Shown in pieces: positions 2,651 to 46,410 of a stretch of DNA of 64,000 bases. A program made the position numbers and the translations under genes. Source of the DNA: Phyllobates terribilis (taxonomy: Eukaryota). The notes under the pieces were generated by a model. The model was not told where the DNA came from. It did no database searches and worked only from the letters and a program-made list of their open reading frames with translations. Location of the stretch: positions 1,051,458,001 to 1,051,522,000 of the forward strand of contig NW_027362761.1 in the NCBI RefSeq assembly GCF_046119375.1, in the 5' to 3' direction. Position 1 is the first letter of the stretch; every line of letters starts with the position of its first letter.

Positions 2651-2709
2651 CAGTTGGAGCGCAGGCTGGATAAGGTCCAGTACAGACTGGGAGACAGGAA
2701 CAGAGCCGC

Positions 2710-13682: not shown

Positions 13683-14669
13683 TTAACAACTTCCTTACTC
13701 TAACACATGTGAAAATTACAAACAATAATCAAAGGGGTTTTTTTTTGCATTTATTGTGCATTCTTCTGTGTGAAAGGGGCATTTTTTTAAAAAAGTCAAA
13801 TTAAAAATTCCAGCATTGTAGACATTAAAATAAGACTGTCTTCCTAACATGATTAGTGTGTTTCAATTTTTTTCTTGTTGCTCATTTGTTGTAGTAGTTT
13901 AATGTACACCCATACTATGTGACAACCGCAAGTCTCACAACAATGCTGAATGCTGTTATCTCATTTTGCTATCTGGGTATGTACCCATCAAAGAAGCAAA
14001 ATAGCTAAACCCTTTTGTCACAGTGGGAGAAGAGAAAAAATTAAAATAGGAAAAAAAGGAAATAAAATACATGTTTTACTTGTTTATTTTTTTTATTAGT
14101 CCAATTTAGCAACTGTACACCCAACAACAATACTGCAGGTTGTTGCTGCATTTTTCTTTCCTAGCATGTATCTACCGACAAATGTAACATTTTTTATTAC
14201 AGACTTTTAATTGGGGGTAGGGCGAGAATAGCGGCATAACAAAAAATAAAAAAATAAAAAATCAAACATTTTACTTTTTGTATATTTGTCTTACGAGTCC
14301 AATTTGAAAAGTATATGCAAAACAATAATACTGCAAGTTGTTGACTTGCCGGATATGTTTTCCTGGCTGAGAAACCACCTGTACATCCTTTTTGGCAAAG
14401 GAGATTTAATTTGGTTGTCAAAAAATAAATAAATAAAAATTTAAGTAAATCTTCACATTTTACTGTGCAGGTCTTCACAGTCAAATTATTTCTTCTTTTT
14501 TAAAAAGCACACATGTTGCTGATTCTGAAATAATAGCAATAATTTTTGCATGGTTTGTTATGAAACCTGTTACTTTCAAAACCGCAAATCTGTTCCTGCA
14601 CCTAAAATAAAGGTATCATTTTTGCACGATTAGTTAAAAGCCACTGTTATGTCTTTTTGTAAACAGTAA

Positions 14670-15044: not shown

Positions 15045-15474
15045 TAAACCGAAATAGAAATGGCTCCTTATATATTCAAGAAACCTCTTGCTGCTCCACA
15101 AACAGGGAGAATTTTTGCACCGCCTCTTGTAAAAAAAAGCCACTGTTTATTCAGAATGCACCGCCTGTGTATATGCCCAAGCAACACAAGTATCTGTTCA
15201 TAAAGTGAATAATTTGGGAAACATTTTTACAATTGAAAAAGCCAAAAAAATATTTTAGTACAGTGTATTGTTTAACCCCTTAACAACATTTGCCGTACTA
15301 ATACGCGTCTGTGCCCTGGGACTTAAGAGCCAGACCCGTATTAGTACGTCATATCTTTAATGCGGCACCGCGACTTAAGTCGCGGTGACAGCATTAAAGT
15401 TACGGTGCCATCCTTCCTCCTGTTAGATGGCGTCATCATCCCGGGGGCTGTCGCCGCCCCCCGCACCAGCGATC

Positions 15475-15677
15475 GCTGTGATTGGCTGTTCAAATCTGAA
15501 CAGCCAATCACAGCATTTCTCACTGTTTCCGGCAATGTGATTGCCGGAAACAGTGATCTGCAGCCTAGGATCGGTGCTCCTATGAGCACCGATCCTAGGA
15601 TGTTGATAGGACACCCCAGCCCTGGCCCCGGACTGCTATGATCGGTGCGATCGCCAATCACATCGATCGCACCGATC
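15475..15677. repeat. Four consecutive perfect short hairpins
   Basis: Stems of 18 bp (15475-15514), 16 bp (15521-15555), 16 bp (15564-15599) and 14 bp (15640-15677). Confidence 0.9.
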
Positions 15678-15786
15678 GTAGCGCGACCGCGCGGTGACAG
15701 GGCGGTCATGGGGCGGTGACCGGCTTGTGACCTGCCTGTCACCGCCCCATGACCCCCTGTAATGTGATTCAAGCCCCCAGACTGCT

Positions 15787-16071
15787 CTGATTGGAGCGAT
15801 TGATGATGACATCGATCGCTCCAATCAGAGTACCTGAATACAGGTGACCGGCGGTCACAAGGAAGTGTCACCTCTCTGTGACCCCCTGTGGTGCGTGCTC
15901 TGCTCCAGCCATATCTGATTGGTGCAATCAGTGTCACCAATCAGATGGCTCGGGCACAACATGCACCACAGGGGGTCACAGAGGGGTGACACCTCCCTGT
16001 GACCGCCTGGTCACCTGTATTCAGGTACTCTGAATGGAGCGATCAATGTCATCAATGATTGCTCCAATCAG
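15787..16071. repeat. Long imperfect fold-back (~140-bp arms)
   Basis: CAGAGTACCTGAATACAGGTGACC...GTGACCCCCTGTGGTG on the left arm is mirrored by CACCACAGGGGGTCAC...GGTCACCTGTATTCAGGTACTCTG on the right; centre ~15925. Confidence 0.85.
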
Positions 16072-16375
16072 ATTACCTCCACCTGTCACCACCTCATCAT
16101 CACCCTGTGACCGCCCTGCAGACCCTCACATTTGGTGAGGATTTCTACAGAGCGATCACATCTGATGTGTCTGTGCTGGGCCTTGTAGTGCCACAGAATA
16201 TTCTGTGACACCACAAGACCATCTTCTCACTGTTCCAGTCGCTGCTGCTGCTGCTGCTCCTGGATCTTCTGTTCCAGCGTCCTGGATCTTGTGCTCCAGC
16301 TCCTGGATCTTCTGGTCCTGACCTGCTGTGGTTCCTGCTCCAGAGCCTGCTGCTGATCCTGCAGAGAAGACTTTG

Positions 16376-17897
16376 GTAAGTCTGTTCTCCCCTCATCCAC
16401 CCCAATCCCCCCTCCCCCCTCTTTTTACCCCCGTAACCTTTTTTTCTGCATCCTGCAGCGGTCTCCAGCTCTGGTCCGAGTCTCCAGCTCCACTCCTGGT
16501 CACCAGCGCCGGGCTCCTGGTCACCAGCGCCGGGCTCCCGGTCTCCTGCTCTGGGTCTTCTGTTCCAGTCCTGCTGACCCTTTGGTAAGTCCATCTCTGA
16601 TCTCCCCTCATCCACCCCAATCCCCCTCTTCCCACTCCCCTGTCTTTTTACCCCTCTTCCCACTCCCCTGTCTTTTTACCCCCCTTCCCACCCCAATCCG
16701 CCTCACCCCAGTGTCCCTGTTAAGTCTTTTGCTTCTGATCTCCAGCTCCAGTACCGGTCTCCTGCTCCGGGCTCCTGGTCTCCTGCACCGGGCTACTGGT
16801 CTCCTGCACCGGGTTCCTGGTCTCCTGCTCCGGGCTCCTGCTCTGGGTCTTCTGTTCCAGTCCTGCTGACCCTTTGGTAAGTCTATCTCTGTACTCCCCT
16901 CATCCACCCCAATCCCCCTCTTCCCACTCCCCTGTCTTTTTACCCCTCTTCCCACTCCCCTGTCTTTTTACCCCCCTTCCCACCCCAATCCGCCTCACCC
17001 CAGTGTCCCTGTTAATTCTTTTGCTTCTGATCTCCAGCTCCAGTACCGGTCTCCTGCTACCGGGCTCCTGCTCCGAGCTCCTGCGCCGGGCTCCCGGTCA
17101 CCAGCTTCGGGCTCCTGGTCACCAGCGCCGGGCTCCTGGTCTCCTGCACCGGGCTCCTGGTCTCCTACACCGGGCTCCCGGTCTCCTGCTCCGGGCTCCC
17201 GGTCTCCTGCTCTGGGTCTTCTGCTCCAGTCCCGCTGACCCTTTCGTAAGTCCATCTCTGATCTCTCCTCATCCACCCCAATCCCCCTCTTCCCACTCCC
17301 CTGTCTTTTTACCCCTCTTCCCACTCCCCTGTCTTTTTACCCCCCTTCCCACCCCAATCCGCCTCACACCAGTGTCCCTGTTAATTCTTTTGCTTCTGAT
17401 CTCCAGCTCCAGTACCGGTCTCCTGCTCCGGGTTCCCGGTCTCCTGCTCCGGGCCCCCAGTCTCCTGCTCCGGGCCCCCGGTCTCCTGCTCCGGGCCCCC
17501 GGTCTTCCTGCTCCGGGCTCCCGTCTTCCTGCTCCGGGCTCCCGGTCACCAGCGCCGGGCTCCCGGTCTCTTGCTCCGGGCTCCCGGTCACCAGCGCCAG
17601 TCTCCTGCTCCGGGCTCCCGTCTTCCTGCTCCGGGCTCCCGGTCACCAGCGCTGGGCTCCCGGTCACCAGCACCAGTCTCCTGCTCCGGGCTCCCGTCTT
17701 CCTGCTCCGGGCTCCTGGTCACCAGTGCCGGGCTCCCGGTCACCAGCGCCGGGCTCCAGGTCACCAGCGCCGGGCTCCTGCTCCAGGCTCCCGGTCCTGA
17801 AAGAAGAACAGAGGGGACTTTGGTAAGTAATCTGATCTCCCCTCATCCAACCCAATTCCCCTCTTCCCACTCCCCACACATTTGTGCGCACATCCAG
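16376..17897 (+). repeat. Tandemly duplicated modules with a 21-bp VNTR and GT-AG intron-like spacers
   Basis: GTAAGT at 16376, 16585, 16877, 17246 and 17823, each followed by a pyrimidine tract ending in CAG (16458, 16745, 17037, 17406, 17897); 21-bp CCGGGCTCCYGGTC(T/A)CC(T/A)GC(T/G) repeats between them. Confidence 0.8.
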
Positions 17898-18057
17898 CAG
17901 CCGCCGAGTATTGATCGGTGGCATAGTTCACCAATCCACACTCGTGCTCGCTGTTTGCACCACATACAGTATTTCCTTTTTCCACACACTCTAAATAAAG
18001 TACTGACACACACACTTTCAAAGTATTGACACACACGCACCACATACATAACAAACA

Positions 18058-19797
18058 ATGTCCGGCTCATTCCAAACTCAGTATTCAGCGGAGGAGGCAT
18101 ACGCTATTCTTGCCTCCGACACTGACAGTGAGGGTGAGGATCCCACATTTCTTTATTTTTCCGACTCCTTGTCGTCTTCCTCCTTCTCTTCTTCCTCCTT
18201 CTCTTCTTCCTCCTCTTCCTCAGGTTCTGCTAGCCCGCCCCGCCGTCGTCGCAGGACAGATGTTCTAGCGCCCCCCACTAGTGAGCCTATATGGACTTCG
18301 CCCCCCGAAAATTATGAGCCGCTGATTCCTGATTTCGTAGCGGAATCAGGAATCAAGTTTGACACCACCGGCCTCACAGAAATAGACTTTTTCAAAGTCT
18401 TTTTCTCTGAGGATTTTATAAACCTCATGGTGGGCCAAACTAATTTATACGCTCATCAATTTTTAGAACAAAACCCCTCTTCATCATTTTCTAACTGGTC
18501 TCCTGTAGACGCAGTAGAAATGATGAAGTTTTGGGGCTTGGTCCTTCTTATGGGGATCTTGAAGAAGCCCGAGCTTCGGCAATACTGGAGTGTTGACGTT
18601 TTGTATAACACTCCAGTGTTCCGAATGGTCATGCCCCGGACACGTTTTCAGGCCATCTACAAGTTCTTGCATTACCAAGATAATGCAAGGTGTCCTGCAC
18701 ACGATGACCCGAACTTTGATCGTCTTTTCAAAGTTCGGCCAGTCATCGAACACTTCAACAACAAGTTTGGTGAAGTGTACGTGCCCCAAAGGGACATCTG
18801 TGTGGATGAGTCCTTAATTTCTTTTAAGGGGCGGCTTGGATTCCGGCAGTACCTGCCCAGTAAGAGGGCAAGGTATGGGATCAAGCTGTATAAACTTTGA
18901 GAGAGTACCTCAGGATACACTCACAAGTTTAGAGTTTATGAAGGGAAGGACTCCCGGATTGAACCCCCTGAATGCCCCCCTGTTCTGGGAGTGAGTGGGA
19001 AAATTGTGTGGGACTTGGTGCACCCACTGCTTGATAAAGGTTATCACCTCTATGTGGATAACTTTTATACAAGTATCCCGCTCTTCCAGTCCCTCTCTGC
19101 GCGACGTACCGCAGCCTGCGGTACTGTCCGCAAAATTCAGAAAGGCCTCCCAAAGACGCTAATTGGGCAGCTGCTCAAAAGGGGTGAGAGCAGAGCCCAA
19201 TGTAGCGACCACCTGTTGATGGTCAAGTACAAGGACAAAAGGGATGTCCTTTCCTTGACCACCATACAAGGTGATGGCAGCACACTCAGCACTGTACGAG
19301 GTTCCACTACACAGGTCGTCAAACCAGACTGTGTAGTGGGGTACAACAAGTACATGGGGGGAGTTGATCTCTCTGATCAAGTCCTCCAGCCATACCGTGC
19401 TTTGAGAAAGGCCAGAGTGTGGTACAAGAAGCTGGCCGTGCACATTGTACAGATGGCAATGCACAACGCTTTCCTTCTGTCACGATGTGCTGGCCAGACT
19501 TCTGCGTCGTATCTTCAGTTTCAGGAAACAGTTATCAAGGCCCTGATATTTGGCAGTGGTGACAGAGCGGGCCCAAGTACTTCTGGAATTGAAGGACCAA
19601 GAATTGTACCAGGCCAGCATTTCCCAGGGCAGATCCCTCACAGCGGAATAAAAGGAAAGTCGCAAAAGAGGTGCCGAGTGTGTTACCGAAGGGAAATACG
19701 CAAGGACACCATTTACCAATGTGACACCTGCCCCGACAAACCTGGCCTGTGTATGAAACACTGCTTCAAAAGGTACCATACTTCGATGGACTATTGA
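18058..19797 (+). pseudogene. piggyBac transposase (PGBD4-like), 579 codons with one in-frame TGA at 18898-18900
   Basis: ORFs 18058-18900 and 18991-19797 share a frame and the intervening codons are open (KL*ESTSGYTHKFRVYEGK); DDD triad ICVDES / YVDNFYTS / MGGVDLSD; C-terminal Cys-rich domain CRVC...CDTC...LCMKHCFKRYH. Confidence 0.93.
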
Positions 19798-19805
19798 ATT
19801 AATTT

Positions 19806-19913
19806 CTGACGTATGACAACCTGACGAACACTGCACAGCTGACGTAGTGTTCGTCAGGTTGTCATACGTCAGTTGTGTAGTGTTCGTCAGATTGTCCTAC
19901 ACAACTGATGTAT
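19806..19913. repeat. Perfect 27-bp stem hairpin plus an overlapping 16/17-bp hairpin directly after the transposase stop
   Basis: CTGACGTATGACAACCTGACGAACACT (19806-19832) is exactly inverted at 19846-19872; second stem pairs 19864-19880 with 19897-19913. Confidence 0.9.
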
Positions 19914-20259
19914 AACACTACATTACAAAATTCAAAAATCAACTAACACTACCAAAAAGGGGGCACTTGTTAGGCATTTCACTGTTTAGGCACATCAAGG
20001 GCTCTGAGAACATGACATGAAGCCAGCAGACCATTCCATCAAAGTCTGCATTCAAAAGCGTCACTCCTTCCCTTCCGAGCCCTTACATGCGCCCAAACAG
20101 TAGTTTTTTTCCAACACATGGGGTATATGAGTACTCAGGAGAAATTGCACAACAACTTATGGGGTGCAATTTCTCCTGGTACCCTTGTGAAAATATTTTT
20201 TTTTGCATTTTTGTGAAAAAAATGTTTTTTTTTTATTTTCACAAGTCAACATTATGATT

Positions 20260-23200
20260 TTCTATAAGGCACCTGGGGGTTCAATGGGCTCACCACACAT
20301 CTATATAAGTTCCCTGGGGGATCTAGTTTCCAAAATGGGGTCACTTGTGGGGGAGCTCCAATGTTTGGGCACACAGGGACTCTTCAAATGCAACATGGTA
20401 TCCGCTAAAAAATTGTCGGCTCAAATTGTTAGCGGACACCATGTTGTGTTTGGAGAGCCCCTCTGTGCCCAAACTAGACCCCCAAGGCACCTATCTAGAT
20501 GCATAGTGAGCACTTGGAACCCCTAGGTGCTTCACAAATTGATTCGTAAAAATGGAAAAGTATTTTTTTTTCCACTTTTACATTTTTATGAATCAATTTG
20601 TGAAGCACCTGGGGGTTCCAAGTGCTCACTATGCATCTAGATAGGTGCCTTGGGGGGTCTAGTTTCCAAAATGGGGTCACTTGTGGGGGAGCTCCAATGT
20701 TTGGGCACACAGGGGCTCTCTAAACCCAACATGGTGTCCGCTAACAATTTGTTAGCGGATACCATGTTGCATTTGAAGAGACCCTGTGTGCCCAAACATT
20801 GGAGCTCCCCCACAAGTGACCACATTTTGGAAACTAGACCCCCCAAGGCACCTATCTAGATGCATAGTGAGCAGTTGCAACCCCCAGGTGCTTCACAAAT
20901 TTATTCGTAAAAATGAAAAGTGAAAAAAAAAACACTTTTTCATTGTTACGAATCAATTTGTGAAGCACCTGGGGGTTCCAACTCCTCATTATGCATCTAG
21001 ATAGGTGCCTTGGGGGGTCTAGTTTACAAAATGGGGTGACTTGTGGGGGAGTTCCAATGTTTGGGCACAAAGGGGCTCTCTAAATGCAACATGGTGTCCG
21101 CTAACAATTTGAGCCGATTTTCCATTCAATTTGTTAGCAGACACCATGTTGCATTTGGAGTGTCCCTGTGTGCCCAAACATTGGAGCTCCCCCACAAGTG
21201 ACCCCATTTTGGAAACTAGACACCCAAGGCACCTATCTAGATGCATATTGAGCAGTTGCAACCCCCAGGTGCTTCACAAATTGATTCGTAAAAATGAAAA
21301 AGTGAAAAAAAAAACACTTTTTCATTGTTACGAATCAATTTGTGAAGCACCTGGGGGTTCCAACTGCTCACTATGCATCTAGATAGGTGCCTTGGGCGGT
21401 CTAGTTTCCAAAATGGGGTCACTTGTGGGGGAGCTCCAATGTTTGGGCACAAACGGGCTCTTTAAATGCAACATGGTGTCCGCTAACAATTTGAGCCGAT
21501 TTTCCATTCAATTTGTTAGCAGACACCATGTTGCATTTGGAGTGTCCCTATGTGCCCAAACATTGGAGCTCCCCCACAAGTGACCCCATTTTGGAAACTA
21601 GACCCCCCAAGGCACCGATCTAGATGCATAGTGAGCAGTTGCAACCCCCAGGTGCTTCACAAATTGATTCGTAAAAATGAAAAAGTGAAAAAAAAAACAC
21701 TTTTTCATTGTTACGAATCAATTTGTGAAGCACCTGGGGGTTCCAACTGCTCACTATGCATCTAGATAGGTGCCTTGAGGGGTCTAGTTTCCAAAATGGG
21801 GTCACTTGTGGGGGAGCTCCAATGTTTGGGCACAAAGGGGCTCTCTAAATGAAACATGGTGTCCGCTAACAATTTGAGCAGATTTTCCATTCAATTTCTT
21901 AGCAGACACCATGTTGCATTTGGAGTGTCCCTTTGTGCCCAAACATTGGAGCTCCCCCACAAGTGACCCCATTTTGGAAACTAGACCCCCCAAGGCACTT
22001 ATCTAGATGCATAGTGAGCAGTTGGAACCCCCAGGTGCTTCACAAATTGATTCGTAACAATGAAAAAGTGTTTTTTTTTTCACTTTTTCATTTTTACGAA
22101 TCAATTTGTGAAGCACCTGGGGGTTGCAACTGCTCACTATGCATCTAGATAGGTGCCTTTGGGGGTCTAGTTTCCAAAATGGGGTCACTTGTGGGAGAGC
22201 TCCAATGTTTGGGCACAAAGGGGCTCTCTAAACCCAACATGGTGTCCGCTAACAATTTGAGCCGACAATTAGTTAGCGGATACCATGTTGCTTTTGAAGA
22301 GTCCCTGTGTGCCCAAACATTGGAGCTCCCCCACAATTGACCCCATTTTGGAAACTAGACCCCCCAAGGCACCTATCTAGATGCATAGTGAGCAGTTGCA
22401 ATCCCAAGGTGCTTCACAAATTGATTCGTAAAAATGAAAAAGTGAAAAAAAAAACACTTTTTCATTGTTACGAATCAATTTGTGAAGCACCTCCGGGTTC
22501 CAACTCCTCACTATGCATCTAGATATTTGCCTTGGGGGGTCTAGTTTCCAAAATGGGGTCACTTGTGGGGGAGCTCCAATGTTTGGGCACAAAGGGGCTC
22601 TCTAAATGCAACATGGTGTCCGCTAACAATTTGAGCCGATTTTCCATTCAATTTGTTAGCAGACACCATGTTGCATTTGGAGTGTCCCTGTGTGCCCAAA
22701 CATTGGAGCTCCCCACAAGTGACCCCATTTTGGAAACTAGACCCCCCAAGGCAACTATCTGGATGCATAGTGAGCAGTTGCAACCCCCAGGTGCTTCACA
22801 AATTGATTCGTAAAAATGAAAAAGTGAAAAAAAAACACTTTTTCATTGTTACGTATCAATTTGTGAAGCACCTGGGGGTTCCAACTGCTTACTATGCACC
22901 TAGATAGGTTCCTTGGGGGGTCTAGTTTCCAAAATGGGGTCACTTGTGGGGGAGCTCCAATGTTTGGGCACACAGGGGCTCTCTAAACCCAACATGGTGT
23001 CCGCTAACAATTTGAGCCGACAATTTGTTAGCGGATACCATGTTGCATTTGAAGAGTCCCTGTGTACCCAAACATTGGAGCTCCCCCACAAATGACCCCA
23101 TTTTGGAAACTAGACCCCCCAAGGCACCTATCTAGATGCATAGTGAGCAGTTGCAACCCCAAGGTGCTTCACAAATTGATTCGTAAAAATGAAAAAGTGA

Positions 23201-26200
23201 AAAAAAAAACACTTTTTCATTGTTACCAATCAATTTGTGAAGCACCTCCGGGTTCCAACTCCTCACTATGCATCTAGATAGGTGCCTTGGGGGGTCTAGT
23301 TTCCAAAATGGGGTCACTTGTGGGGGAGCTCCAATGTTTGGGCACAAAGGGGCTCTCTACATGCAACATGGTGTCCGCTAACAATTTGAGCCGATTTTCC
23401 ATTCAATTTGTTAGCAGACACCATGTTGCATTTGGAGTGTCCCTGTGTGCCCAAACATTGGAGCTCCCCCACAAGTGACCCCATTTTGGAAACTAGACCC
23501 CCCAAGGCACCTATCTAGATGCATAGTGAGCAGTTGCAACCCCCAGGTGCTTCACAAATTGATTCGTAAAATGAAAAAGTGAAAAAAAAAACACTTTTTC
23601 ATTGTTACAAATCAATTTGTGAAGCACCTGGGGGTTCCAACTGCTCACTATGCATCTAGATAGGTGCCTTGGGCAGTCTAGTTTCCAAAATGGGGTCACT
23701 TGTGGGGGAGTTCCAATGTTTGGGCACAAAGGGGCTCTGTAAATGCAACATGGTGTCCGCTTACAATTTGAGCCGATTTTCCATTCAATTTGTTAGCAGA
23801 CACCATGTTGCATTTGGAGTGTCCCTGTGTGCCCAAACATTGGAGCACCCCCACAAGTGACCCCATTTTGGAAACTAGACCCCCCAAGGCACCTATCTAG
23901 ATGCATAGTGAGCAGTTGCAACCCCCAGGTGCTTCACAAATTGATTCGTAAAAATGAAAAAGTGAAAAAAAAAACACTTTTTCATTGTTATGAATCAATT
24001 TGTGAAGCACATGGGGGTTCCAACTGCTCACTATGCATCTAGATAGGTGCCTTGGGGGGTCTAGTTTCCAAAATGGGGTCACTTGTGGGGGAGCTCCAAT
24101 GTTTGGGCACAAAGGGGCTCTCTAAATGCAACATGGTGTCCGCTAACAATTTGAGCCGATTTTCCATTCAATTTGTTAGCAGACACCATGCTGCATTTGG
24201 AGTGTCCCTGTGTGCCCAAACATTGGAGCTCCCCCACAAGTCACCCCATTTTAGAAACTAGACCACCAAAGGCACCTATCTAGATGCATAGTGAGCAGTT
24301 GCAACCCCCAGGTGCTTCACAAATTTATTCGTAAAAATGAAAAAGTGAAAAAAAAAACACTTTTTCATTGTTACGAATCAATTTGTGAAGCACCTGGGGG
24401 TTCCAACTGCTCACTATGCATCTAAATAGATGCCTTGGGGGGTCTAGTTTCCAAAATGGGGTCACTTGTGGGGAGCTCCAATGTTTGGGCACAAAGGGGC
24501 TCTCTAAATGCAACATGGTGTCCGCTAACAATTTGAGCCGATTTTCCATTCAATTTGTTAGCAGACACCATGTTGCATTTGGAGTGTCCCTGTGTGCCCA
24601 AACATTGGAGCTCCCCCACAAGTAACCCCATTTTGGAAACTAGACCCCCCAAGGCACTTATCTAGATGCATAGTGAGCAGTTGGAACCCCCAGGTGCTTC
24701 ACAAATTGATTCGTAACAATGAAAAAGTGTTTTTTTTTTCACTTTTTCATTTTTACGAATCAATTTGTGAAGCACCTGGGGGTTGCAACTGCTCACTATG
24801 CATCTAGATAGGTGCCTTTGGGGGTCTAGTTTCCAAAATGGGGTCACTTGTGGGGGAGCTCCAATGTTTGGGCACAAAGGGGCTCTCTAAACCCAACATG
24901 GTGTCCGCTAACAATTTGAGCGGACAATTAGTTAGCGGATACCATGTTGCATTTGAAGAGTCCCTGTGTGCCCAAACATTGGAGCTCCCCCACAATTGAC
25001 CCCATTTTGGAAACTAGACCCGCCAAGGCACCTATCTAGATGCATAGTGAGCAGTTGCAAGCCCAAGGTGCTTCACAAATTGATTCGTAAAAATGAAAAA
25101 GTGAAAAAAAAAACACTTTTTCATTGTTACGAATCAATTTGTGAAGCACCTCCGGGTTCCAACTCCTCACTATGCATCTAGATATTTGCCTTGGGGGGTC
25201 TAGTTTCCAAAATGTGGTCACTTGTGGGGGAGCTCCAATGTTTGGGCACAAAGGGGCTCTCTAAATGCAACATGGTGTCCGCTAACAATTTGAGCCGATT
25301 TTCCATTCAATTTGTTAGCAGACACCATGTTGCATTTGGAGTGTCCCTGTGTGCCCAAACATTGGAGCTCCCCCACAAGTGACCCCATTTTAGAAACTAG
25401 ACCCCCCAAGGCAACTATCTGGATGCATAGTGAGCAGTTGAAACCCCCAGGTGCTTCACAATTTGATTCGTAAAAATGAAAAAGTGAAAAAAAAACACTT
25501 TTTCATTGTTACGAATCAATTTGTGAAGCACCTGGGGGTTCCAACTGCTTACTATGCACCTATATAGGTGCCTTGGGGGGTCTAGTTTCCAAAATGGGGT
25601 CACTTGTGGGGAAGCTCCAATGTTTGGGCACACAGGGGCTCTCTAAACCCAACATGGTGTCCGCTACCAATTTGAGAAGACAATTTGTTAGCGGATACCA
25701 TGTTGCATTTGAAGAGTCCCTGTGTACCCAAACATTGGAGCTCCCCCACAAGTGACCCCATTTTGGAAACTAGACCCCCCAAGGCACCTATCTAGATGCA
25801 TATTGAGCAGTTGCAACCCCCAGGTGCTTCACAAATTGATTCGTAAAAATGAAAAAGTGAAAAAAAAAACACTTTTTCATTGTTACGAATCAATTTGTGA
25901 AGCACCTGGGGGTTCCAACTGCTCACTATGCATCTAGATAGGTGCCTTGGGCGGTCTAGTTTCCAAAATGGGGTCACTTGTGGGGGAGCTCCAATGTTTG
26001 GGCACAAAGGGGCTCTTTAAATGCAACATGGTGTCCGCTAACAATTTGAGCCGATTTTCCATTCAATTTGTTAGCAGACACCATGTTGCATTTGGAGTGT
26101 CCCTATGTGCCCAAACATTGGAGCTCCCCCACAAGTGACCCCATTTTGGAAACTAGACCCCCCAAGGCACCGATCTAGATGCATAGTGAGCAGTTGCAAC

Positions 26201-29200
26201 CCCCAGGTGCTTCACAAATTGATTCGTAAAAATGAAAAAGTGAAAAAAAAAACACTTTTTCATTGTTACGAATCAATTTGTGAAGCACCTGGGGGTTCCA
26301 AGTGCTTACTATGCACCTATATAGGTGCCTTGGGGGGTCTAGTTTCCAAAATGGGGTCACTTGTGGGGAAGCTCCAATGTTTGGGCACACAGGGGCTCTC
26401 TAAACCCAACATGGTGTCCGCTACCAATTTGAGAAGACAATTTGTTAGCGGATACCATGTTGCATTTGAAGAGTCCATGTGTACCCAAACATTGGAGCTC
26501 CCCCACAAGTGACCCCATTTTGGAAACTAGACCCCCCAAGGCACCTATCTAGATGCATATTGAGCAGTTGCAACCCCCAGGTGCTTCACAAATTGATTCG
26601 TAAAAATGAAAAAGTGAAAAAAAAAACACTTTTTCATTGTTACGAATCAATTTGTGAAGCACCTGGGGGTTCCAACTGCTCACTATGCATCTAGATAGGT
26701 GCCTTAGGCGGTCTAGTTTCCAAAATGGGGTCACTTGTGGGGGAGCTCCAATGTTTGGGCACAAAGGGGCTCTTTAAATGCAACATGGTGTCCGCTAACA
26801 ATTTGAGCCGATTTTCCATTCAATTTGTTAGCAGACACCATGTTGCATTTGGAGTGTCCCTATGTGCCCAAACATTGGAGCTCCCCCACAAGTGACCCCA
26901 TTTTGGAAACTAGACCCCCCAAGGCACCGATCTAGATGCATAGTGAGCAGTTGCAACCCCCAGGTGCTTCACAAATTGATTCGTAAAAATGAAAAAGTGA
27001 AAAAAAAAACACTTTTTCATTGTTACGAATCAATTTGTGAAGCACCTGGGGGTTCCAACTGCTCACTATGCATCTAGATAGGTGCCTTGAGGGGTCTAGT
27101 TTCCAAAATGGGGTCACTTGTGGGGGAGCTCCAATGTTTGGGCACAAAGGGGCTCTCTAAATGAAACATGGTGTCCGCTAACAATTTGAGCAGATTTTCC
27201 ATTCAATTTGTTAGCAGACACCATGTTGCATTTGGAGTGTCCCTGTGTGCCCAAACATTGGAGCTCCCCCACAAGTGACCCCATTTTGGAAACTAGACCC
27301 CCCAAGGCACTTATCTAGATGCATAGTGAGCAGTTGGAACCCCCAGGTGCTTCACAAATTGATTCGTAACAATGAAAAAGTGTTTTTTTTTTCACTTTTT
27401 CATTTTTACGAATCAATTTGTGAAGCACCTGGGGGTTGCAACTGCTCACTATGCATCTAGATAGGTGCCTTTGGGGGTCTAGTTTCCAAAATGGGGTCAC
27501 TTGTGGGAGAGCTCCAATGTTTGGGCACAAAGGGGCTCTCTAAACCCAACATGGTGTCCGCTAACAATTTGAGCCGACAATTAGTTAGCGGATACCATGT
27601 TGCATTTGAAGAGTCCCTGTGTGCCCAAACATTGGAGCTCCCCCACAATTGACCCCATTTTGGAAACTAGACCCCCCAAGGCACCTATCTAGATGCATAG
27701 TGAGCAGTTGCAATCCCAAGGTGCTTCACAAATTGATTCGTAAAAATGAAAAAGTGAAAAAAAAAACACTTTTTCATTGTTACGAATCAATTTGTGAAGC
27801 ACCTCCGGGTTCCAACTCCTCACTATGCATCTAGATATTTGCCTTGGGGGGTCTAGTTTCCAAAATGGGGTCACTTGTGGGGGAGCTCCAATTTTTGGGC
27901 ACAAAGGGGCTCTCTAAATGCAACATGGTGTCCGCTAACAATTTGAGCCGATTTTCCATTCAATTTGTTAGCAGACACCATGTTGCATTTGGAGTGTCCC
28001 TGTGTGCCCAAACATTGGAGCTCCCCCACAAGTGACCCCATTTTGGAAACTAGACCCCCCAAGGCAACTATCTGGATGCATAGTGAGCAGTTGCAACCCC
28101 CAGGTGCTTCACAAATTGATTCGTAAAAATGAAAAAGTGAAAAAAAAACACTTTTTCATTGTTACGAATCAATTTGTGAAGCACCTGGGGGTTCCAACTG
28201 CTTACTATGCACCTAGATAGGTTCCTTGGGGGGTCTAGTTTCCAAAATGGGGTCACTTGTGGGGGAGCTCCAATGTTTGGGCACACAGGGGCTCTCTAAA
28301 CCCAACATGGTGTCCGCTAACAATTTGAGCCGACAATTTGTTAGCGGATACCATGTTGCATTTGAAGAGTCCCTGTGTACCCAAACATTGGAGCTCCCCC
28401 ACAAATGACCCCATTTTGGAAACTAGACCCCCCAAGGCACCTATCTAGATGCATAGTGAGCAGTTGCAACCCCAAGGTGCTTCACAAATTGATTCGTAAA
28501 AATGAAAAAGTGAAAAAAAAAACACTTTTTCATTGTTACCAATCAATTTGTGAAGCACCTCCGGGTTCCAACTCCTCACTATGCATCTAAATAGGTGCCT
28601 TTGGGGGTCTAGTTTCCAAAATGGGGTCACTTGTGGGGGAGCTCCAATGTTTGGGCACAAAGGGGCTCTCTACATGCAACATGGTGTCCGCTAACAATTT
28701 GAGCCGATTTTCCATTCAATTTGTTAGCAGACACCATGTTGCATTTGGAGTGTCCCTGTGTGACCAAACATTGGAGCTCCCCCACAAGTGACCCCATTTT
28801 GGAAACTACACCCCCCAAGGCACCTATCTAGATGCATAGTGAGCAGTTGCAACCCCCAGGTGCTTCACAAATTGATTCGTAAAAATGAAAAAGTGAAAAA
28901 AAAAACACTTTTACATTCTTACGAATCAATTTGTGAAGCACCTGGGGGTTCCAACTGCTCACTATGCATCTAGATAGGTGCCTTGGGGGGTCTAGTTTCC
29001 AAAATGGGGTCACTTGTGGGGGAGCTCCAATGTTTGTGCACAAAGGGGCTCTCTAAATGCAACATGGTGTCCGCTAACAGTTTGAGCCGATTTTCCATTC
29101 AATTTGTTAGCAGACACCATGTTGCATTTGGAGTGTCCCTGTGTGCCCAAACATTGGAGCTCCCCCACAAGTGACCCCATTTTGGAAACTAGACCCCCCA

Positions 29201-32200
29201 AGGCACTTATCTAGATGCATAGTGAGCAGTTGCAACCCCCAGGTGCTTCACAAATTGATTCGTAAAAATGAAAAAGTGAAAAAAAAAACACTTTTTCATT
29301 GTTATGAATCAATTTGTGAAGCACATGGGGGTTCCAACTGCTCACTATGCATCTAGATAGGTGCCTTGGGGGGTCTAGTTTCCAAAATGGGGTCACTTGT
29401 GGGGGAGCTCCAATGTTTGGGCACAAAGGGGCTCTCTAAATGCAACATGGTGTCCGCTAACAATTTGAGCCGATTTTCCATTCAATTTGTTAGCAGACAC
29501 CATGCTGCATTTGGAGTGTCCCTGTGTGCCCAAACATTGGAGCTCCCCCACAAGTGACCCCATTTTAGAAACTAGACCACCAAAGGCACCTATCTAGATG
29601 CATAGTGAGCAGTTGCAACCCCCAGGTGCTTCACAAATTTATTCGTAAAAATGAAAAAGTGAAAAAAAAAACACTTTTTCATTGTTACGAATCAATTTGT
29701 GAAGCACCTGGGGGTTCCAACTGCTCACTATGCATCTAAATAGATGCCTTGGGGGGTCTAGTTTCCAAAATGGGGTCACTTGTGGGGAGCTCCAATGTTT
29801 GGGCACAAAGGGGCTCTCTAAATGCAACATGGTGTCCGCTAACAATTTGAGCCGATTTTCCATTCAATTTGTTAGCAGACACCATGTTGCATTTGGAGTG
29901 TCCCTGTGTGCCCAAACATTGGAGCTCCCCCACAAGTAACCCCATTTTGGAAACTAGACCCCCCAAGGCACTTATCTAGATGCATACTGAGCAGTTGGAA
30001 CCCCCAGGTGCTTCACAAATTGATTCGTAACAATGAAAAAGTGTTTTTTTTTTCACTTTTTCATTTTTACGAATCAATTTGTGAAGCACCTGGGGGTTCC
30101 AACTGCTCACTATGCATCTAGATAGGTGCCTTTGGGGGTCTAGTTTCCAAAATGGGGTCACTTGTGGGGGAGCTCCAATGTTTGGGCACAAAGGGGCTCT
30201 CTAAACCCAACATGGTGTCCGCTAACAATTTGAGCGGACAATTAGTTAGCGGATACCATGTTGCATTTGAAGAGTCCCTGTGTGCCCAAACATTGGAGCT
30301 CCCCCACAATTGACCCCATTTTGGAAACTAGACCCGCCAAGGCACCTATCTAGATGCATAGTGAGCAGTTGCAAGCCCAAGGTGCTTCACAAATTGATTC
30401 GTAAAAATGAAAAAGTGAAAAAAAAAACACTTTTTCATTGTTACGAATCAATTTGTGAAGCACCTCCGGGTTCCAACTCCTCACTATGCATCTAGATATT
30501 TGCCTTGGGGGGTCTAGTTTCCAAAATGTGGTCACTTGTGGGGGAGCTCCAATGTTTGGGCACAAAGGGGCTCTCTAAATGCAACATGGTGTCCGCTAAC
30601 AATTTGAGCCGATTTTCCATTCAATTTGTTAGCAGACACCATGTTGCATTTGGAGTGTCCCTGTGTGCCCAAACATTGGAGCTCCCCCACAAGTGACCCC
30701 ATTTTAGAAACTAGACCCCCCAAGGCAACTATCTGGATGCATAGTGAGCAGTTGAAACCCCCAGGTGCTTCACAAATTGATTCGTAAAAATGAAAAAGTG
30801 AAAAAAAAACACTTTTTCATTGTTACGAATCAATTTGTGAAGCACCTGGGGGTTCCAACTGCTTACTATGCACCTATATAGGTGCCTTGGGGGGTCTAGT
30901 TTCCAAAATGGGGTCACTTGTGGGGAAGCTCCAATGTTTGGGCACACAGGGGCTCTCTAAACCCAACATGGTGTCCGCTACCAATTTGAGAAGACAATTT
31001 GTTAGCGGATACCATGTTGCATTTGAAGAGTCCCTGTGTACCCAAACATTGGAGCTCCCCCACAAGTGACCCCATTTTGGAAACTAGACCCCCCAAGGCA
31101 CCTATCTAGATGCATAGTGAGCAGTTGCAACCCCAAGGTGCTTCACAAATTGATTCGTAAAAATGAAAAAGTGAAAAAAAAAACACTTTTTCATTGTTAA
31201 GAATCAATTTGTGAAGCACCTCCGGGTTCCAACTCCTCACTATGCATCTAAATAGGTGCCTTTGGGGGTCTAGTTTCCAAAATGGGGTCACTTGTGGGGG
31301 AGCTCCAATGTTTGGGCACAAAGGGGCTCTCTACATGCAACATGGTGTCCGCTAACAATTTGAGCCGATTTTCCATTCAATTTGTTAGCAGACACCATGT
31401 TGCATTTGGAGTGTCCCTGTGTGCCCAAACATTGGAGCTCCCCCACAAGTGACCCCATTTTGGAAACTAGACCCCCCAAGGCACCTATCTAGATGCATAG
31501 TGAGCAGTTGCAACCCCCAGGTGCTTCACAAATTGATTCGTAAAAATGAAAAAGTGAAAAAAAAAACACTTTTACATTCTTACGAATCAATTTGTGAAGC
31601 ACCTGGGGGTTCCAACTGCTCACTATGCATCTAGATAGGTGCCTTGGGGGGTCTAGTTTCCAAAATGGGGTCACTTGTGGGGGAGCTCCAATGTTTGTGC
31701 ACAAAGGGGCTCTCTAAATGCAACATGGTGTCCGCTAACAGTTTGAGCCGATTTTCCATTCAATTTGTTAGCAGACACCATGTTGCATTTGGAGTGTCCC
31801 TGTGTGCCCAAACATTGGAGCTCCCCCACAAGTGACCCCATTTTGGAAACTAGACCCCCCAAGGCACTTATCTAGATGCATAGTGAGCAGTTGCAACCCC
31901 CAGGTGCTTCACAAATTGATTCGTAAAAATGAAAAAGTGAAAAAAAAAACACTTTTTCATTGTTACGAATCAATTTGTGAAGCACCTGGGGGTTCCAACT
32001 GCTCACTATGCATCTAGATAGGTGCCTTGGGGGGTCTAGTTTCCAAAATGGGGTCACTTGTGGGGGAGCTCCAATGTTTGGGCACAAAGGGGCTCTCTAA
32101 ATGCAACATTGTGTCCGCTAACAATTTGAGCCGATTTTCCATTCAATTTGTTAGCAGACACCATGTTGCATTTGGAGTGTCCCTGTGTGTCCAAACATTG

Positions 32201-33650
32201 GAGCTCCCCCACAAGTGACCCCATTTTGGAAACTAGACCATCCAAGTCACCTATCTAGATGCATAGTGAGCAGTTGCAACCCCCAGGTGCTTCACAAATT
32301 GATTCGTAAAAATTAAAAGGTGAAAAAAAAAAACACTTTTTCAATGTTACGAATCAATTTGTGAAGCACCTGGGGGTTCCAACTGCTCACTATGCATCTA
32401 GATAGGTGCCGTGGGGGGTCTAGTTTCCAAAATGGGGTCACTTGTGGGGGAGCTCCAATGTTTGGGCACAAAGGGGCTCTCTAAATGCAACATGGTGTCC
32501 GCTAACAATTTGAGCCGATTTTCCATTCAATTTGTTAGCAGACACCATGTTGCATTTGGAGTGTCCCTGTGTGCCCAAACATTGGAGCTCCCCCACAAGT
32601 GACTCCATTTTGGAAACTATACCCCCCTAGGCACCTATCTGGATGCATAGTGAGCAGTTGCAACCCCCAGGTGCTTCACAAATTGATTCGTAAAAATGAA
32701 AAAGTGAAAACAAAAACACTTTTTCATTGTTACGAATCAATTTGTGAAGCACCTGGGGGTTCCAACTGCTCACTATGCATCTAGATAGGTGCCTTGGGGG
32801 GTCTAGTTTCCAAAATGGGGTCACTTGTGGGGGAGCTCCAATGTTTGGGCACAAAGGGGCTCTCTAAATGCAACATGGTGTCCGCTAACAATTTGAGCCG
32901 ATTTTCCATTCAATTTGATAGCAGACACCATGTTGCATTTGGAGTGTCCCTGTGTGCCCAAACATTGGAGCTCCCCCACAAGTGACCCCATTTTGGAAAC
33001 TAGACCCCCCAAGGCACCTATCTAGATGCATAGTGAGCAGTTGCAACCCCCAGGTGCTTCACAAATTGATTCGTAAAAATGAAAAAGTGAAAAAAAAACA
33101 CTTTTTCATTGTTACGAATAAATTTGTGAAGCACCTGGGGGTTCCAACTGCTCACTATGCATCTAGATAGGTGCCTTGGGTGGTCTAGTTTCCAAAATGG
33201 GGTCACTTGTGGGGGAGCTCCAATGTTTGGGCTTACAGGGACACTCCAAATGCAACATGGTGTCTGCTAACAAATTGAATGGAAAATCGGCTCAAATTGT
33301 TAGCGGACACCATGTTGCATTTAGAGAGCCCCTTTGTGCCCAAACATTGGTGCTCCCCCACAAGTGACCCCATTTTGGAAACTAGACCCCCCAAGGCACC
33401 TATCTAGATGCATAGTGAGCAGTTGGAACCCCCAGGTGCTTCACAAATTGATTCGTAACAATGAAAAAGTGTTTTTTTTTTCACTTTTTCATTTTTATGA
33501 ATCAATTTGTGAAGCACCTGGGGGTTGCAACTGCTCACTATGCATCTAGATAGGTGCCTTGGGGGGTCTAGTTTCCAAAATGGGGTCACTTGTGGGGGAG
33601 CTCCAATGTTTGGGCACACAGGGGCTCTCTAAACGCAACATGGTGTCCGC
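20260..33650. repeat. ~13.4-kb satellite of ~35 palindromic 374-383-bp units (~190-bp module in alternating orientation)
   Basis: The module ...GGGGTCTAGTTTCCAAAATGGGGTCACTTGTGGGGGAGCTCCAATGTTTGGGCAC... alternates with its reverse complement around two loop types; near-identical short ORFs appear on both strands throughout the ORF track. Confidence 0.97.
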
Positions 33651-34754
33651 TAATTATTCAAGCAAATTTCACAATCAAAAAGTCAAATGGCGCTCCTTCC
33701 CTTTCGAGCCCTATAGTGCGCCCAAACAGTATTTTTTCCCCAAATATTGGGTATCTGCGTGCCCAAGGGAAATTGCACAACAAATTTTGTGGTCCATTTT
33801 TTCTTGTTACCCCTGTGAAAATAAAAAAAATTGGGTCTAAAGTAACATTTTTGTGAAAAAAGTTAAATGTTCATTTTTTTCTTCCACATTCAAAAAATTC
33901 CTATGAAGCACCTGAAGGGTTAATAAAGTTCTTGAATGTGGTTTTGTGCACCTTGAGGGGTGCAGTTTTTAGAATGGTGTCACTTTTGGGTATTTTCTGT
34001 CATAAAGACCTCTCAAAGTGACTTCAAATGTGATGTGGCCCCTAAAAAAGTGGTTTTGTAAATTTTGTTGGAAAAATGAGAAATCGCTGGTCAACTTTTA
34101 ACCCTTATAGCTCCCTAACAAAAAAAAATTTTGGTTCCAAAATTGTGCTGATGTAAAGTAGACATGTGGGAAATGTTATTTATTAACTCTTTTGTGTGAC
34201 ATATCGCTCTGATTTCAGGGCTTAAAAATTCAAATTTTAAAAATTGCAAAATTTTCCAAATTTTCGCCAAATTTCCGTTTTTTTCACAAATAAACGCAAG
34301 TGATATCGAAGAAATTTTTCAACAATCATGAAGTACAATATGTCACGAAAAAACATTCTCAGAATCAGGGGGATCCGTTGAAGCGTTCCAGAGTAATTAC
34401 CTCATAAAATGACAGTGGTCAGAATTGTAAAAATTGGCCCGGTCATTAACGTGCAAACCACCCGCGGGGCTTAAGGGGTTAAAACAGGCTGTTGCTTACA
34501 ACCAGATGACATCCATTTACCCATGCCCAGATATTTTGCTGTCATTTTGACATTTTTAAGGCTGTGTTTGCATTAAGGAGATTGAAAGGGGATGTAAATA
34601 CAGTGCTAGACTTTTACACATCTTTTCTTGAACAATTAGAAGTTTAGCACCACTTGCAATTTGTGGCCAATCGATACGCTGCAAATCACATTTTGGGGAA
34701 AATTTTTATGAAGCTGGTGAATTTGCATTTCAATGGATTCAGTCCTCTCTAGTT

Positions 34755-46257: not shown

Positions 46258-46410
46258 ACTTTCAGCGTGCCCACAGCCTTAACCTCGGCCTCTGCATGCA
46301 CCATTACCATCATGTCCAGTTCCCCGTCCCTTGCCACGTGCTTTGCCCATTTTAAATGGAGGACAGTATCTTCTACGCTCACTACAAATGACTGAGCTTG
46401 GAGCGAACTT

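What the first reader, a model, noticed from the sequence alone, without database searches (positions are those of the whole stretch)
15276..34478. 19-kb piggyBac carrying a 13-kb alternating-inverted satellite: a mobile palindrome-array vehicle
One TTAA-flanked element with matching CCCCTTAA termini holds a nearly intact transposase plus ~70 copies of a ~190-bp module arranged head-to-head then tail-to-tail. Ordinary satellites are head-to-tail; long runs of near-perfect palindromes are normally unstable (cruciforms, breakage). The architecture resembles fold-back or rolling-hairpin concatemers (inference). The closest precedent I know is Xenopus Xstir repeats within TTAA-specific MITEs, which use a different, shorter unit. 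With both ends intact, the whole array could be mobilised in trans.
Basis: partly seen in the sequence, partly recalled or inferred. Interest (0 to 1): 0.8.

Follow-up and report, generated by a model that had tools for sequence, protein, structure and literature searches.

The report
Frog piggyBac carrying a palindromic-unit satellite
A 19-kb piggyBac transposon in a frog genome holds a 13-kb satellite that is an ordinary head-to-tail array of a hairpin-shaped 383-bp unit, so it shows transposon repeats growing into satellite DNA and not a new replication mechanism.

Summary
TTAA|CCCCTTAA (15272-15283) and TTAAGGGG|TTAA (34471-34482) bracket a piggyBac transposase gene at 18058-19800. The gene has its catalytic motifs and zinc finger and one in-frame stop. 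Downstream lie 71 arms of about 179 nt in strict +/- alternation (20262-33660).

The rolling-hairpin or fold-back reading does not hold. The repeating unit is a 383-bp imperfect palindrome, present 34 times head to tail.
- Plus and minus arms carry fixed diagnostic differences.
- Neighbouring opposite arms are no more alike (92.5%) than distant ones (92.6%).
- Same-orientation arms are 95.4% alike, and 97-98% alike every 7 units. That is a classic higher-order repeat, made by unequal exchange.
- Loop flips are rare events. One is copied with the higher-order repeat, and the two edge units are the opposite isomer.

The arm derives from a ~370-bp direct repeat in the family's 3' subterminal region. 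A truncated relative at 12190-13686 carries the same repeat.

The family is high-copy in this species and in at least two related species, and the stop codon is private to this copy. That both ends belong to one element is likely, but no empty site was seen and the shared terminal repeat is only 8 bp. Mobilisation of the whole array is inference.

Two unchecked notes from this scan (s1-241560, s1-245151) describe similar features in other piggyBac copies of this genome.

The parts
15272..15275 (.). Left TTAA target-site copy
   Evidence: Sequence read directly; pattern search.
15276..15283 (+). Left terminal inverted repeat, CCCCTTAA. Only 8 bp are shared with the right end.
15285..16100 (+). 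5' subterminal region packed with short hairpin palindromes, many centred on ATTGG/CCAAT. It looks promoter-like, with CpG o/e 0.70.
   Evidence: 15 inverted pairs with stems of 12-27 nt; CpG ratio. Positions 15300-15699 are high-copy in three species, while 15700-16100 is high-copy only in organism A.
16230..17830 (+). GC-rich cassettes of 21-bp repeats. Each ends in a G|GTAAGT donor followed by a 161-nt spacer with a pyrimidine tract and CAG (exon/intron-like). The number of cassettes varies between family copies.
   Evidence: TRF; self-BLAST; splice-motif map, plus strand only; joint 16361->17797 in two runs.
18058..19800 (+). piggyBac transposase gene, 580 codons, with one in-frame TGA at 18898-18900. 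The three aspartate motifs and the C-terminal zinc finger are present.
   Evidence: The stop is private to this copy (position 18900).
19952..20261 (+). Degenerate ancestral-type 3' subterminal repeat unit (arm plus non-arm half) just upstream of the array.
   Evidence: 71-73% identity to 33575-33823 and to 12781-13029; sequence.
20262..33660 (.). Satellite of 34 head-to-tail copies of a 383-bp (or 374-bp) imperfect-palindrome unit, 71 arms in all. It has a 7-unit (~2.66-kb) higher-order repeat. The first and last units are the opposite isomer.
33661..34470 (+). 3' subterminal tail shared with the family. It is 91% identical to 12808-13650.
34471..34478 (-). Right terminal inverted repeat, TTAAGGGG.
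   Evidence: The relative's end, AAGTGG|TTAA, aligns at the same place.
34479..34482 (.). Right TTAA target-site copy
12190..13686 (+). 5'-truncated relative of the same family. It has two direct arms 375 bp apart, no inverted arms, the same 3' tail, and ends ...AAGTGG|TTAA.

Best explanation
This is one piggyBac-superfamily DNA transposon, about 19.2 kb long, inserted at a TTAA in the repeat-dense genome of a frog. The closest named transposase is from the poison frog Ranitomeya imitator. Its transposase gene is disabled by a single stop codon.

The family normally carries a few ~370-bp direct repeats between the transposase gene and the 3' end. In one lineage the 'arm' half of that repeat was duplicated once in inverted orientation. 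That produced a 383-bp imperfect palindrome with 179-nt arms and loops of 15 nt and 10 nt.

This dimer was then amplified head to tail like any satellite, by unequal exchange or replication slippage. A 7-dimer block formed first, and that block was then copied almost five times. Occasional recombination between inverted arms flipped a loop or a block.

Shown here: the anatomy, the unit of amplification, the higher-order repeat, the derivation from the family's subterminal repeat, and the family's high copy number. Inferred: the molecular mechanism of amplification, where it happened, and that the element could still be moved by transposase supplied from other copies.
For: piggyBac identity:
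- Pfam and PDB matches cover the protein end to end.
- The best named hit is the R. imitator PGBD-like protein at 79%.
- TTAA plus CCCC...GGGG ends.

The dimer is the unit of amplification:
- Direct 383-bp copies are 95-98% alike, against about 90-92% for the inverted match.
- Four fixed diagnostic sites separate plus arms from minus arms along the array.
- Adjacent opposite arms are 92.5% alike and non-adjacent ones 92.6%. Same-orientation arms are 95.4% alike.

Higher-order repeat:
- Dimer identity is 97.0%, 97.4% and 96.3% at lags 7, 14 and 21, against about 94.4% at other lags.
- The 374-bp variant with a 9-bp loop deletion recurs with that period.
- So does the flipped centre-2 loop.

Edges: the first and last dimers are the opposite isomer, and the first is the more diverged of the two.

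Origin:
- The arm matches the first half of the family's direct repeat, score 267 against a shuffle maximum of 25.
- The second half of that repeat is not the arm's reverse complement, score 21-26 against a shuffle maximum of 23-28.
- The truncated relative at 12190-13686 has only direct arms.

Family context:
- The 5' end and the transposase are multi-copy in organisms A, B and C.
- The arm is 10-50 times deeper than the transposase.
- 14 contigs in X1 carry a full-length 'flop' loop, of which this window has only one. Dimers therefore exist elsewhere in the genome.

Dimer 31-mers are held at 0.62-0.70 in runs from two studies and at least four samples of organism A.
Against: - The shared terminal repeat is only 8 bp, and nothing else matches between the ends.
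- No empty site, and no second full-length copy with both ends, could be inspected.
- The left flank is itself a repeat of similar k-mer depth in organism A, so that run could not confirm the left boundary.
- Array length rests on the assembly alone. Short-read contigs cannot span it.
- Whether the expansion happened at this locus or in the progenitor before insertion is unresolved.
Confidence: 0.7

Rival explanations
1. The array was already long in the progenitor element and arrived here by transposition as cargo.
For: - Higher-order-repeat copies differ by about 2.5-3%, which could be older than the insertion.
- Other loci hold palindromic dimers (14 'flop' contigs; unchecked note s1-241560).
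- piggyBac can move 100-200-kb cargo in engineered constructs (PMC6431247).
Against: - The only other in-genome example on record is about 1 kb (s1-241560, unchecked).
- The efficiency of DNA transposition drops above about 6 kb of cargo (PMC6431247).
- Diverged, opposite-isomer edge units with a homogeneous interior are the usual signature of local expansion.
- This copy's divergence from the family consensus could not be measured well enough to date the insertion.
Confidence: 0.2
2. The two termini belong to different elements. A piggyBac with its own 3' end lost lies next to a separate TTAA-type non-autonomous element of the 'tail' family that carries the satellite, so no single 19-kb mobile unit exists.
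For: - The terminal repeat is only 8 bp.
- The tail family is far more abundant than the transposase and occurs without a transposase at 12190-13686.
- No empty site was seen.
Against: - An exact 12-bp TTAACCCCTTAA in the correct inverse orientation, brackets a transposase read in the expected direction, and it occurs nowhere else in the 64 kb.
- There is no second pair of TTAA-flanked ends between the transposase stop and the array.
- The ancestral repeat unit at 19952-20261 follows the transposase directly, as a 3' UTR would.
- The 5' 400 bp and the transposase co-occur at high copy in three species.
Confidence: 0.12
3. The array is a rolling-hairpin or fold-back concatemer. Each inverted module would be made by hairpin-primed or strand-switch synthesis, leaving flip/flop junctions.
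For: - Strict alternation of orientation.
- Exact reverse-complement loop isomers do exist.
- Each dimer can fold into a very stable hairpin.
Against: - Arms flanking a junction are no more alike than distant opposite arms.
- Plus and minus arms have fixed differences.
- Centre-1 flips occur in 1 of 34 dimers.
- Centre-2 flips occur in 5 of 34, and four of those are copies of one event spaced 7 dimers apart.
- The 7-dimer higher-order repeat is a direct-repeat signature.
Confidence: 0.04
4. The array is an assembly artefact: a chimeric fold-back, or a mis-expanded or collapsed repeat.
For: Thirteen kilobases of 95%-similar units is hard to assemble, and no spanning read could be examined.
Against: - A fold-back chimera gives one large palindrome. 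It does not give 34 units with subtype-specific arms and a regular 7-unit variant pattern.
- The dimer's 31-mers are present in independent individuals and studies.
Confidence: 0.06

Closest known systems
Xstir tandem repeats inside the Xmix (T2-A1) MITE of Xenopus (Hikosaka et al. 2000, 2004, as summarised in PMC6004289)
   Same: An internal segment of a TTAA-targeting DNA transposon in a frog is amplified into a tandem-repeat family that rides between the element's ends.
   Different: - Xmix is a non-autonomous T2-MITE with a terminal AGGRR motif, now linked to Kolobok and not to piggyBac (PMC6004289).
- Here the host element carries a piggyBac transposase gene and CCCC...GGGG ends.
- Here the amplified unit is a 383-bp palindrome with a higher-order repeat.
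Tetris foldback transposon and its TIR-220 satellite in Drosophila virilis (PMC4079207)
   Same: Internal tandem repeats of a DNA transposon served as building blocks for kb-size satellite-like arrays.
   Different: - In Tetris the repeats sit in long terminal inverted repeats at both ends, and the units are direct.
- Here the two ends share only 8 bp, the array lies on one side only, and the inversion is inside each unit.
Satellites with intra-monomer dyad symmetry: Tribolium madens TmSat2 (704 bp, ~300-bp inverted segments), T. brevicornis (1061 bp, ~470-bp segments), Trichogramma brassicae (385 bp, 80-bp repeats) (PMC13081366)
   Same: The head-to-tail satellite has a monomer made of two long, inversely oriented subunits, so the array reads as alternating orientation and can form hairpins.
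   Different: Those are abundant (peri)centromeric insect satellites with no link to a transposon. This one is a vertebrate array confined between transposon ends. PMC13081366 itself calls long intra-monomer dyads 'not so common'.
Tandem arrays of coral piggyBac-related CMITEs (PMC2872659)
   Same: piggyBac-related TTAA elements whose sequences form tandem arrays, attributed there to replication slippage and not to transposition.
   Different: In the corals whole MITEs are arrayed. Here an internal subterminal module is arrayed inside one element.

Membership tests
piggyBac superfamily (PBLE) | Transposase with the DDE_Tnp_1_7 catalytic domain | tested here: met
   PF13843 at E 1.2e-45 (residues 109-280 of piece 1) and 2.3e-32 (piece 2), together covering profile positions 3-349. 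piggyBat transposase 9c0f aligns over residues 35-578.
piggyBac superfamily (PBLE) | Three catalytic aspartates (DDD) | tested here: met
   CVDESL, LYVDNFYTS and GGVDLSDQ in the translation align to LSLDEG, IYMDNYYNS and KGVDRADQ of piggyBat. That these are the catalytic residues is established knowledge and was not tested here.
piggyBac superfamily (PBLE) | C-terminal cysteine-rich domain | tested here: met
   PF13842 zf-Tnp_2 at E 2.5e-9, residues 221-263 of the second piece.
piggyBac superfamily (PBLE) | TTAA target-site duplication | tested here: met
   TTAA at 15272-15275 and 34479-34482. TTAA is the same at every piggyBac insertion, so on its own it cannot pair the two ends.
piggyBac superfamily (PBLE) | Terminal inverted repeats starting CCC... 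and ending ...GGG, with the hallmark CC[C/T]T (PMC2872659) | tested here: inconclusive
   The ends read CCCCTTAA and TTAAGGGG, so the CCC/GGG rule is met. The fourth base is C, not T, and the repeat is only 8 bp.
piggyBac superfamily (PBLE) | Evidence of mobility as a unit (empty site, insertion polymorphism) | tested here: inconclusive
   The single read-laying run covered only the left junction, and no informative loose end at 15275/15276 was among the rows shown. The right junction and the empty site were not examined.
Satellite DNA with higher-order repeat | Head-to-tail tandem copies of one unit, with a multi-unit periodicity in similarity | tested here: met
   34 units of 383 or 374 bp. 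Identity peaks at lags 7, 14 and 21 (96.3-97.4% against about 94.4%).
Satellite DNA with higher-order repeat | Long arrays at several genomic sites or high genomic abundance | tested here: inconclusive
   The arm is extremely abundant in three species, but mostly as the ancestral direct-repeat type (loose ends at 20689). Dimers at other loci are indicated only by 14 contigs and by an unchecked note.
Rolling-hairpin / fold-back concatemer | Arms on either side of a junction are copies of each other, so adjacent arms are the most alike | tested here: not met
   Adjacent arms are 92.5% and 92.4% alike, non-adjacent opposite arms 92.6%.
Rolling-hairpin / fold-back concatemer | Flip and flop loop isomers at comparable frequency and independent of position | tested here: not met
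   Centre 1 is flipped in 1 of 34 dimers. Centre 2 is flipped in 5 of 34, four of them at 7-dimer spacing.
Foldback (FB-type) transposon | Long terminal inverted repeats built of the tandem repeats at both ends | tested here: not met
   The 5' and 3' terminal 400 bp share nothing beyond 8 bp. The array is on the 3' side only.
T2-MITE / Kolobok (host of Xstir) | TTAA target plus a terminal AGGRR motif in the inverted repeat (PMC6004289) | tested here: not met
   The TTAA target is met. Reading inward from the 5' TTAA, however, the end is CCCCT and not AGGRR, and the encoded transposase is piggyBac.
Penelope-like / retrozyme palindromic arrays | Hammerhead ribozyme motifs or a reverse transcriptase associated with the inverted units | tested here: not met
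   No Rfam family reaches its gathering score in 12000-36000 on either strand. No RT-like ORF appears among the element's ORFs.

The most novel reading that the evidence does not exclude
The array sits directly downstream of the transposase stop codon, so read-through transcripts would carry dozens of 180-bp hairpins. Their arms are homologous to the 3' subterminal repeats of every family member. The expanded copy could therefore act as a built-in hairpin-RNA (small-RNA) trigger that silences its own piggyBac family, analogous to maize Mu killer. At the same time the family could disperse palindromic satellite seeds across the genome.
Probability: 0.1. Interest if true: 0.65.

Novelty: new variant of a known kind. 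Interest (0 to 1): 0.36.

Why it matters
This copy preserves successive steps of how a transposon's own subterminal repeats can turn into satellite DNA: direct repeat, single inverted duplication, dimer amplification, then higher-order repeat. The ancestral state survives both at the array's edges and in a relative 1.6 kb away.

Long intra-monomer dyads are uncommon in satellites and have mostly been described in beetles. A vertebrate example between transposon ends would allow two tests: how such hairpin-prone arrays persist, and whether transposons seed them at new sites in giant frog genomes.

It does not call for a new replication or transposition mechanism.

Tried and rejected
- **Rolling-hairpin or fold-back synthesis.** Rejected on arm subtype structure, the lack of any adjacency effect, and the rarity of flips.
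- **Ancestral unit already a degenerate palindrome.** Rejected. Its second half scores no better than shuffles against the arm's reverse complement.
- **Hammerhead, retrozyme or Penelope-type origin of the palindromic units.** This was prompted by other notes on this genome. No Rfam hit was found.
- **Other full-length copies for end-to-end comparison.**
  - The Ranitomeya contig that encodes P0001 could not be fetched.
  - The Logan contigs of P0002 are 1.4-1.8 kb, and P0002 is only 62% identical to the window's transposase piece.
  - Exact look-ups of the two window ORFs found nothing.
- Searches of earlier findings by sequence were blank.
- **In-window paralogue of the insertion site.** None was found, so no empty-site test was possible.
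- **Coding continuity across the insertion.** This could not be used. The immediate flanks hold no ORF of 90 aa or more with a recognisable domain, and the nearest transposase-like ORFs (Tc1/mariner type by eye) start about 270 bp downstream.
- **Pfam on two of the GC-rich cassette ORFs.** No family was found.
- **Read laying.** The call could not confirm the left boundary, because the flank is itself repetitive and only the best-supported loose ends are listed.
Full report
**What is there**

The window has no N. The 12-mer TTAACCCCTTAA occurs exactly twice, at 15272-15283 on the plus strand and 34471-34482 on the minus strand. About 0.42 hits are expected even with one mismatch allowed. Reading inward, the ends are TTAA|CCCCTTAAC... 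and ...CTTAAGGGG|TTAA. Beyond those 8 bp the two ends are unrelated: a local alignment of the terminal 400 bp scores 18, and the shuffle mean is 17.8.

Between the ends, 18058-19800 is one reading frame of 580 codons, interrupted once by TGA at 18898-18900.
- Pfam finds DDE_Tnp_1_7 on both pieces (E 1.2e-45 and 2.3e-32, jointly profile positions 3-349) and the zf-Tnp_2 cysteine-rich domain.
- The solved piggyBat transposase 9c0f aligns from residue 35 to its last residue, 578.
- The three aspartate motifs (CVDESL, LYVDNFYTS, GGVDLSDQ) lie opposite the piggyBat ones.
- The best named relative is a PGBD-like protein of the poison frog Ranitomeya imitator, 79% over the first piece and 83% over 124 residues of the second. 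Other anurans follow at 38-62%.

The host is therefore a frog, probably a dendrobatid or a near relative. The tools keep its name coded.

**The array**

TRF reports a 383-bp period, 33.9 copies, 92% matches, at 20745-33653. A 24-nt anchor motif maps 36 plus-oriented and 34 minus-oriented arms, strictly alternating from 20666 to 33575. Spacings are 163 (or 154) and 219-220 nt. The apparent plus-plus pair at the start (20330, 20666) hides a minus arm at 20416-20535 that lost the anchor through an internal deletion.

Each dimer has two arms of about 179 nt, a 15-nt loop at one centre (AGCCGATTTTCCATT) and an A10 loop at the other. As a single strand it folds into a 180-bp hairpin of -204 kcal/mol, z = -34.7.

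**What the repeating unit is**

Four results show that the dimer was amplified, not the single arm.
- Direct 383-bp copies match at 95-98%. The same stretch matched in reverse gives about 90-92%.
- Plus and minus arms differ at four fixed diagnostic positions, held almost all along the array.
- Opposite arms that touch at a junction are 92.5% (centre 1) and 92.4% (centre 2) alike. Opposite arms anywhere in the array are 92.6% alike. Same-orientation arms average 95.4%.
- Dimer identity peaks at lags of 7, 14 and 21 dimers (97.0%, 97.4% and 96.3%, against about 94.4% at other lags). Arm identity reaches 97.2% and 97.8% at lags of 14 and 28 arms.

The 374-bp variant, which has a 9-bp deletion in the centre-1 loop, recurs with the same ~2.66-kb period.

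This is a conventional head-to-tail satellite with a 7-unit higher-order repeat present nearly five times. Its monomer happens to be an imperfect palindrome. The palindrome was made once and is old (about 7.5% arm divergence). The later history is direct-repeat amplification, for which unequal exchange or replication slippage is the established mechanism. That last step is inference.

**Flip/flop**

Exact reverse-complement isomers of both loops exist, but they are rare and inherited.
- Centre 1 is flipped only in the last dimer, 33192/33355.
- Centre 2 is flipped at 21954, 24613, 27266 and 29927, that is once per higher-order repeat. That is one event copied four times. It is flipped again at the last junction, 33355/33575.
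- The nearest diagnostic site is swapped together with the loop. Recombination between inverted arms inverting the segment between them would do exactly that.
- The first and last dimers as a whole match the internal ones better in reverse (0.902 against 0.864, and 0.954 against 0.913). The first is the more diverged of the two.

Older, opposite-isomer edge units around a homogeneous interior fit expansion from within a short older array. A single large inversion of the interior would also fit. I cannot tell these two apart.

A rolling-hairpin or strand-switch process predicts near-identical adjacent arms and roughly equal isomers. Neither is seen.

**Where the unit came from**

The 3' tail 33602-34445 is 91% identical to 12808-13650, a 5'-truncated relative lying 1.6 kb upstream of the element. 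That relative ends ...AAGTGG|TTAA at the position aligned with ...AAGGGG|TTAA. It has two arms in direct orientation 375 bp apart and no inverted arm.

Inside the element, a degenerate unit of the same direct type precedes the array (19952-20261). Another follows it, because the last plus arm runs on into the non-arm half at 33661-33880.

The arm aligns to the first half of this ancestral unit with a score of 267 against a shuffle maximum of 25. The second half is not the arm's reverse complement: scores are 21-26 against shuffle maxima of 23-28. The palindromic dimer is therefore derived. An inverted copy of the arm replaced the non-arm half of a family-typical ~370-bp subterminal direct repeat.

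**Family context from public runs**

All runs are kept as short contigs, so they show presence and variants but not array length. Laying contigs of four runs on 14700-20699 gave tens of thousands of matches. Two runs were from organism A, in different studies. One each came from organisms B and C.
- The 5' 400 bp and the transposase are multi-copy in all three organisms.
- 15700-18100 is multi-copy only in A.
- The arm is 10-50 times deeper than the transposase everywhere. Loose ends at 20689 show that most of this depth comes from the ancestral direct-repeat type.
- At 18900, about 99% of the summed depth of organism A contigs carries a different letter, so the stop is private to this copy.
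- The Ranitomeya protein has a cysteine at that place.
- A joint 16361->17797 in both organism A runs shows copies with fewer GC-rich cassettes.
- Fourteen contigs in X1 carry a full-length 'flop' centre-1 loop next to position 20416. The window holds only one such loop, so palindromic dimers exist at other loci.

The 31-mers of two dimers are held at 0.62-0.70 in organism A runs from two studies and at least four samples. Other organisms hold them at 0.22-0.25. The dimer sequence as such is therefore species-specific, and it is not an artefact of one data set.

**Is it one element?**

Evidence for:
- The exact inverse 12-mer is unique in the window and brackets a transposase in the expected orientation.
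- There are no other candidate ends between the transposase and the array.
- The 3' boundary is confirmed by the relative.
- The 5' end and the transposase are co-amplified across species.

Evidence against or missing:
- The shared terminal repeat is only 8 bp.
- TTAA duplications are uninformative, because every insertion has the same one.
- The left flank is itself repetitive in organism A.
- No empty site or second full-length copy could be inspected.

I put a composite of two elements at about 0.12.

Whether the 13 kb grew here or was carried in is open. The efficiency of DNA transposition falls above about 6 kb of cargo, although 100-200 kb has been moved in engineered piggyBac constructs (PMC6431247). 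An unchecked note from this scan describes a palindrome array of only about 1 kb in another piggyBac copy (s1-241560). I favour in-situ growth from a short seed that the family carries.

**Comparison with what is known**
- Transposon-borne tandem repeats that grow into satellites are known. Xstir inside the Xmix T2-MITE of Xenopus is one case, a TTAA-targeting element now linked to Kolobok (PMC6004289).
- TIR-220 of the Tetris foldback element is another (PMC4079207).
- Coral piggyBac-related MITE arrays are a third (PMC2872659).
- Satellites whose monomer consists of two long inverted subunits are also known, but are called 'not so common'. Examples are Tribolium madens TmSat2, T. brevicornis and Trichogramma (PMC13081366).

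What is new here is the combination. The host is an autonomous-type piggyBac. The satellite unit is a long dyad. The intermediate steps are preserved side by side. I rate it a new variant of a known kind, of moderate interest.

**Not excluded**

The array lies in what would be the 3' untranslated region, so read-through transcripts would be rich in long hairpins homologous to the family's own subterminal repeats. These could feed small-RNA silencing, in the manner of Mu killer. No RNA evidence was available, and I give this about 0.1.

Noticed in passing
window 15285-16100: About a dozen different short hairpin palindromes with 12-27-nt stems, several of them perfect, sit in the element's 5' subterminal region. 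Many are centred on ATTGG/CCAAT. CpG o/e is 0.70. The region looks like a promoter built of palindromic CCAAT boxes. Positions 15700-16100 are multi-copy only in organism A.
   Followed up: partly
window 16230-17830: GC-rich 21-bp repeats are organised as exon-like blocks. Each ends in G|GTAAGT (donors at 16376, 16585, 16877, 17246, 17823). After the donors at 16585, 16877 and 17246 comes a 161-nt spacer with a pyrimidine tract and CAG. The motifs are on the plus strand only. Block lengths of 131, 208 and 416 nt are not multiples of three, so a repeat protein is unlikely. The cassette number varies between family copies (joint 16361->17797). This matches an unchecked note on another copy (s1-245151).
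   Followed up: partly
window 19806-19900: Nested hairpins (ctgacgtatgacaacctgacgaacac... and its complement) lie immediately after the transposase stop codon.
   Followed up: no
window 12190-13686: A 5'-truncated relative of the same family has only direct subterminal repeats and ends AAGTGG|TTAA, 1.6 kb upstream of the big element.
   Followed up: yes
window 34752-36261 and 38225-39925: Two copies that look like Tc1/mariner (transposase-like ORFs at 35116-35454 on the minus strand and 38863-39627 on the plus strand; family judged by eye, not scanned) lie in inverted orientation, 87-92% alike, just downstream of the element.
   Followed up: no
window 20262-33660 compared with the rest of the element: CpG o/e is 0.23 in the array, against 0.49-0.70 in the 5' region, cassettes, transposase and tail. 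The arm sequence is much more CpG-depleted than its carrier.
   Followed up: no
window 1-264, 2412-3335, 4227-5341, 41348-42166, 46410-46905, 61414-61686: Several unrelated tandem arrays are present: a 137-bp unit at both 1-264 and 41348-42166, 35/36-bp minisatellites, a 366-bp unit in three copies, a 151-bp unit and a 110-bp unit. The window as a whole is very repeat-dense.
   Followed up: no
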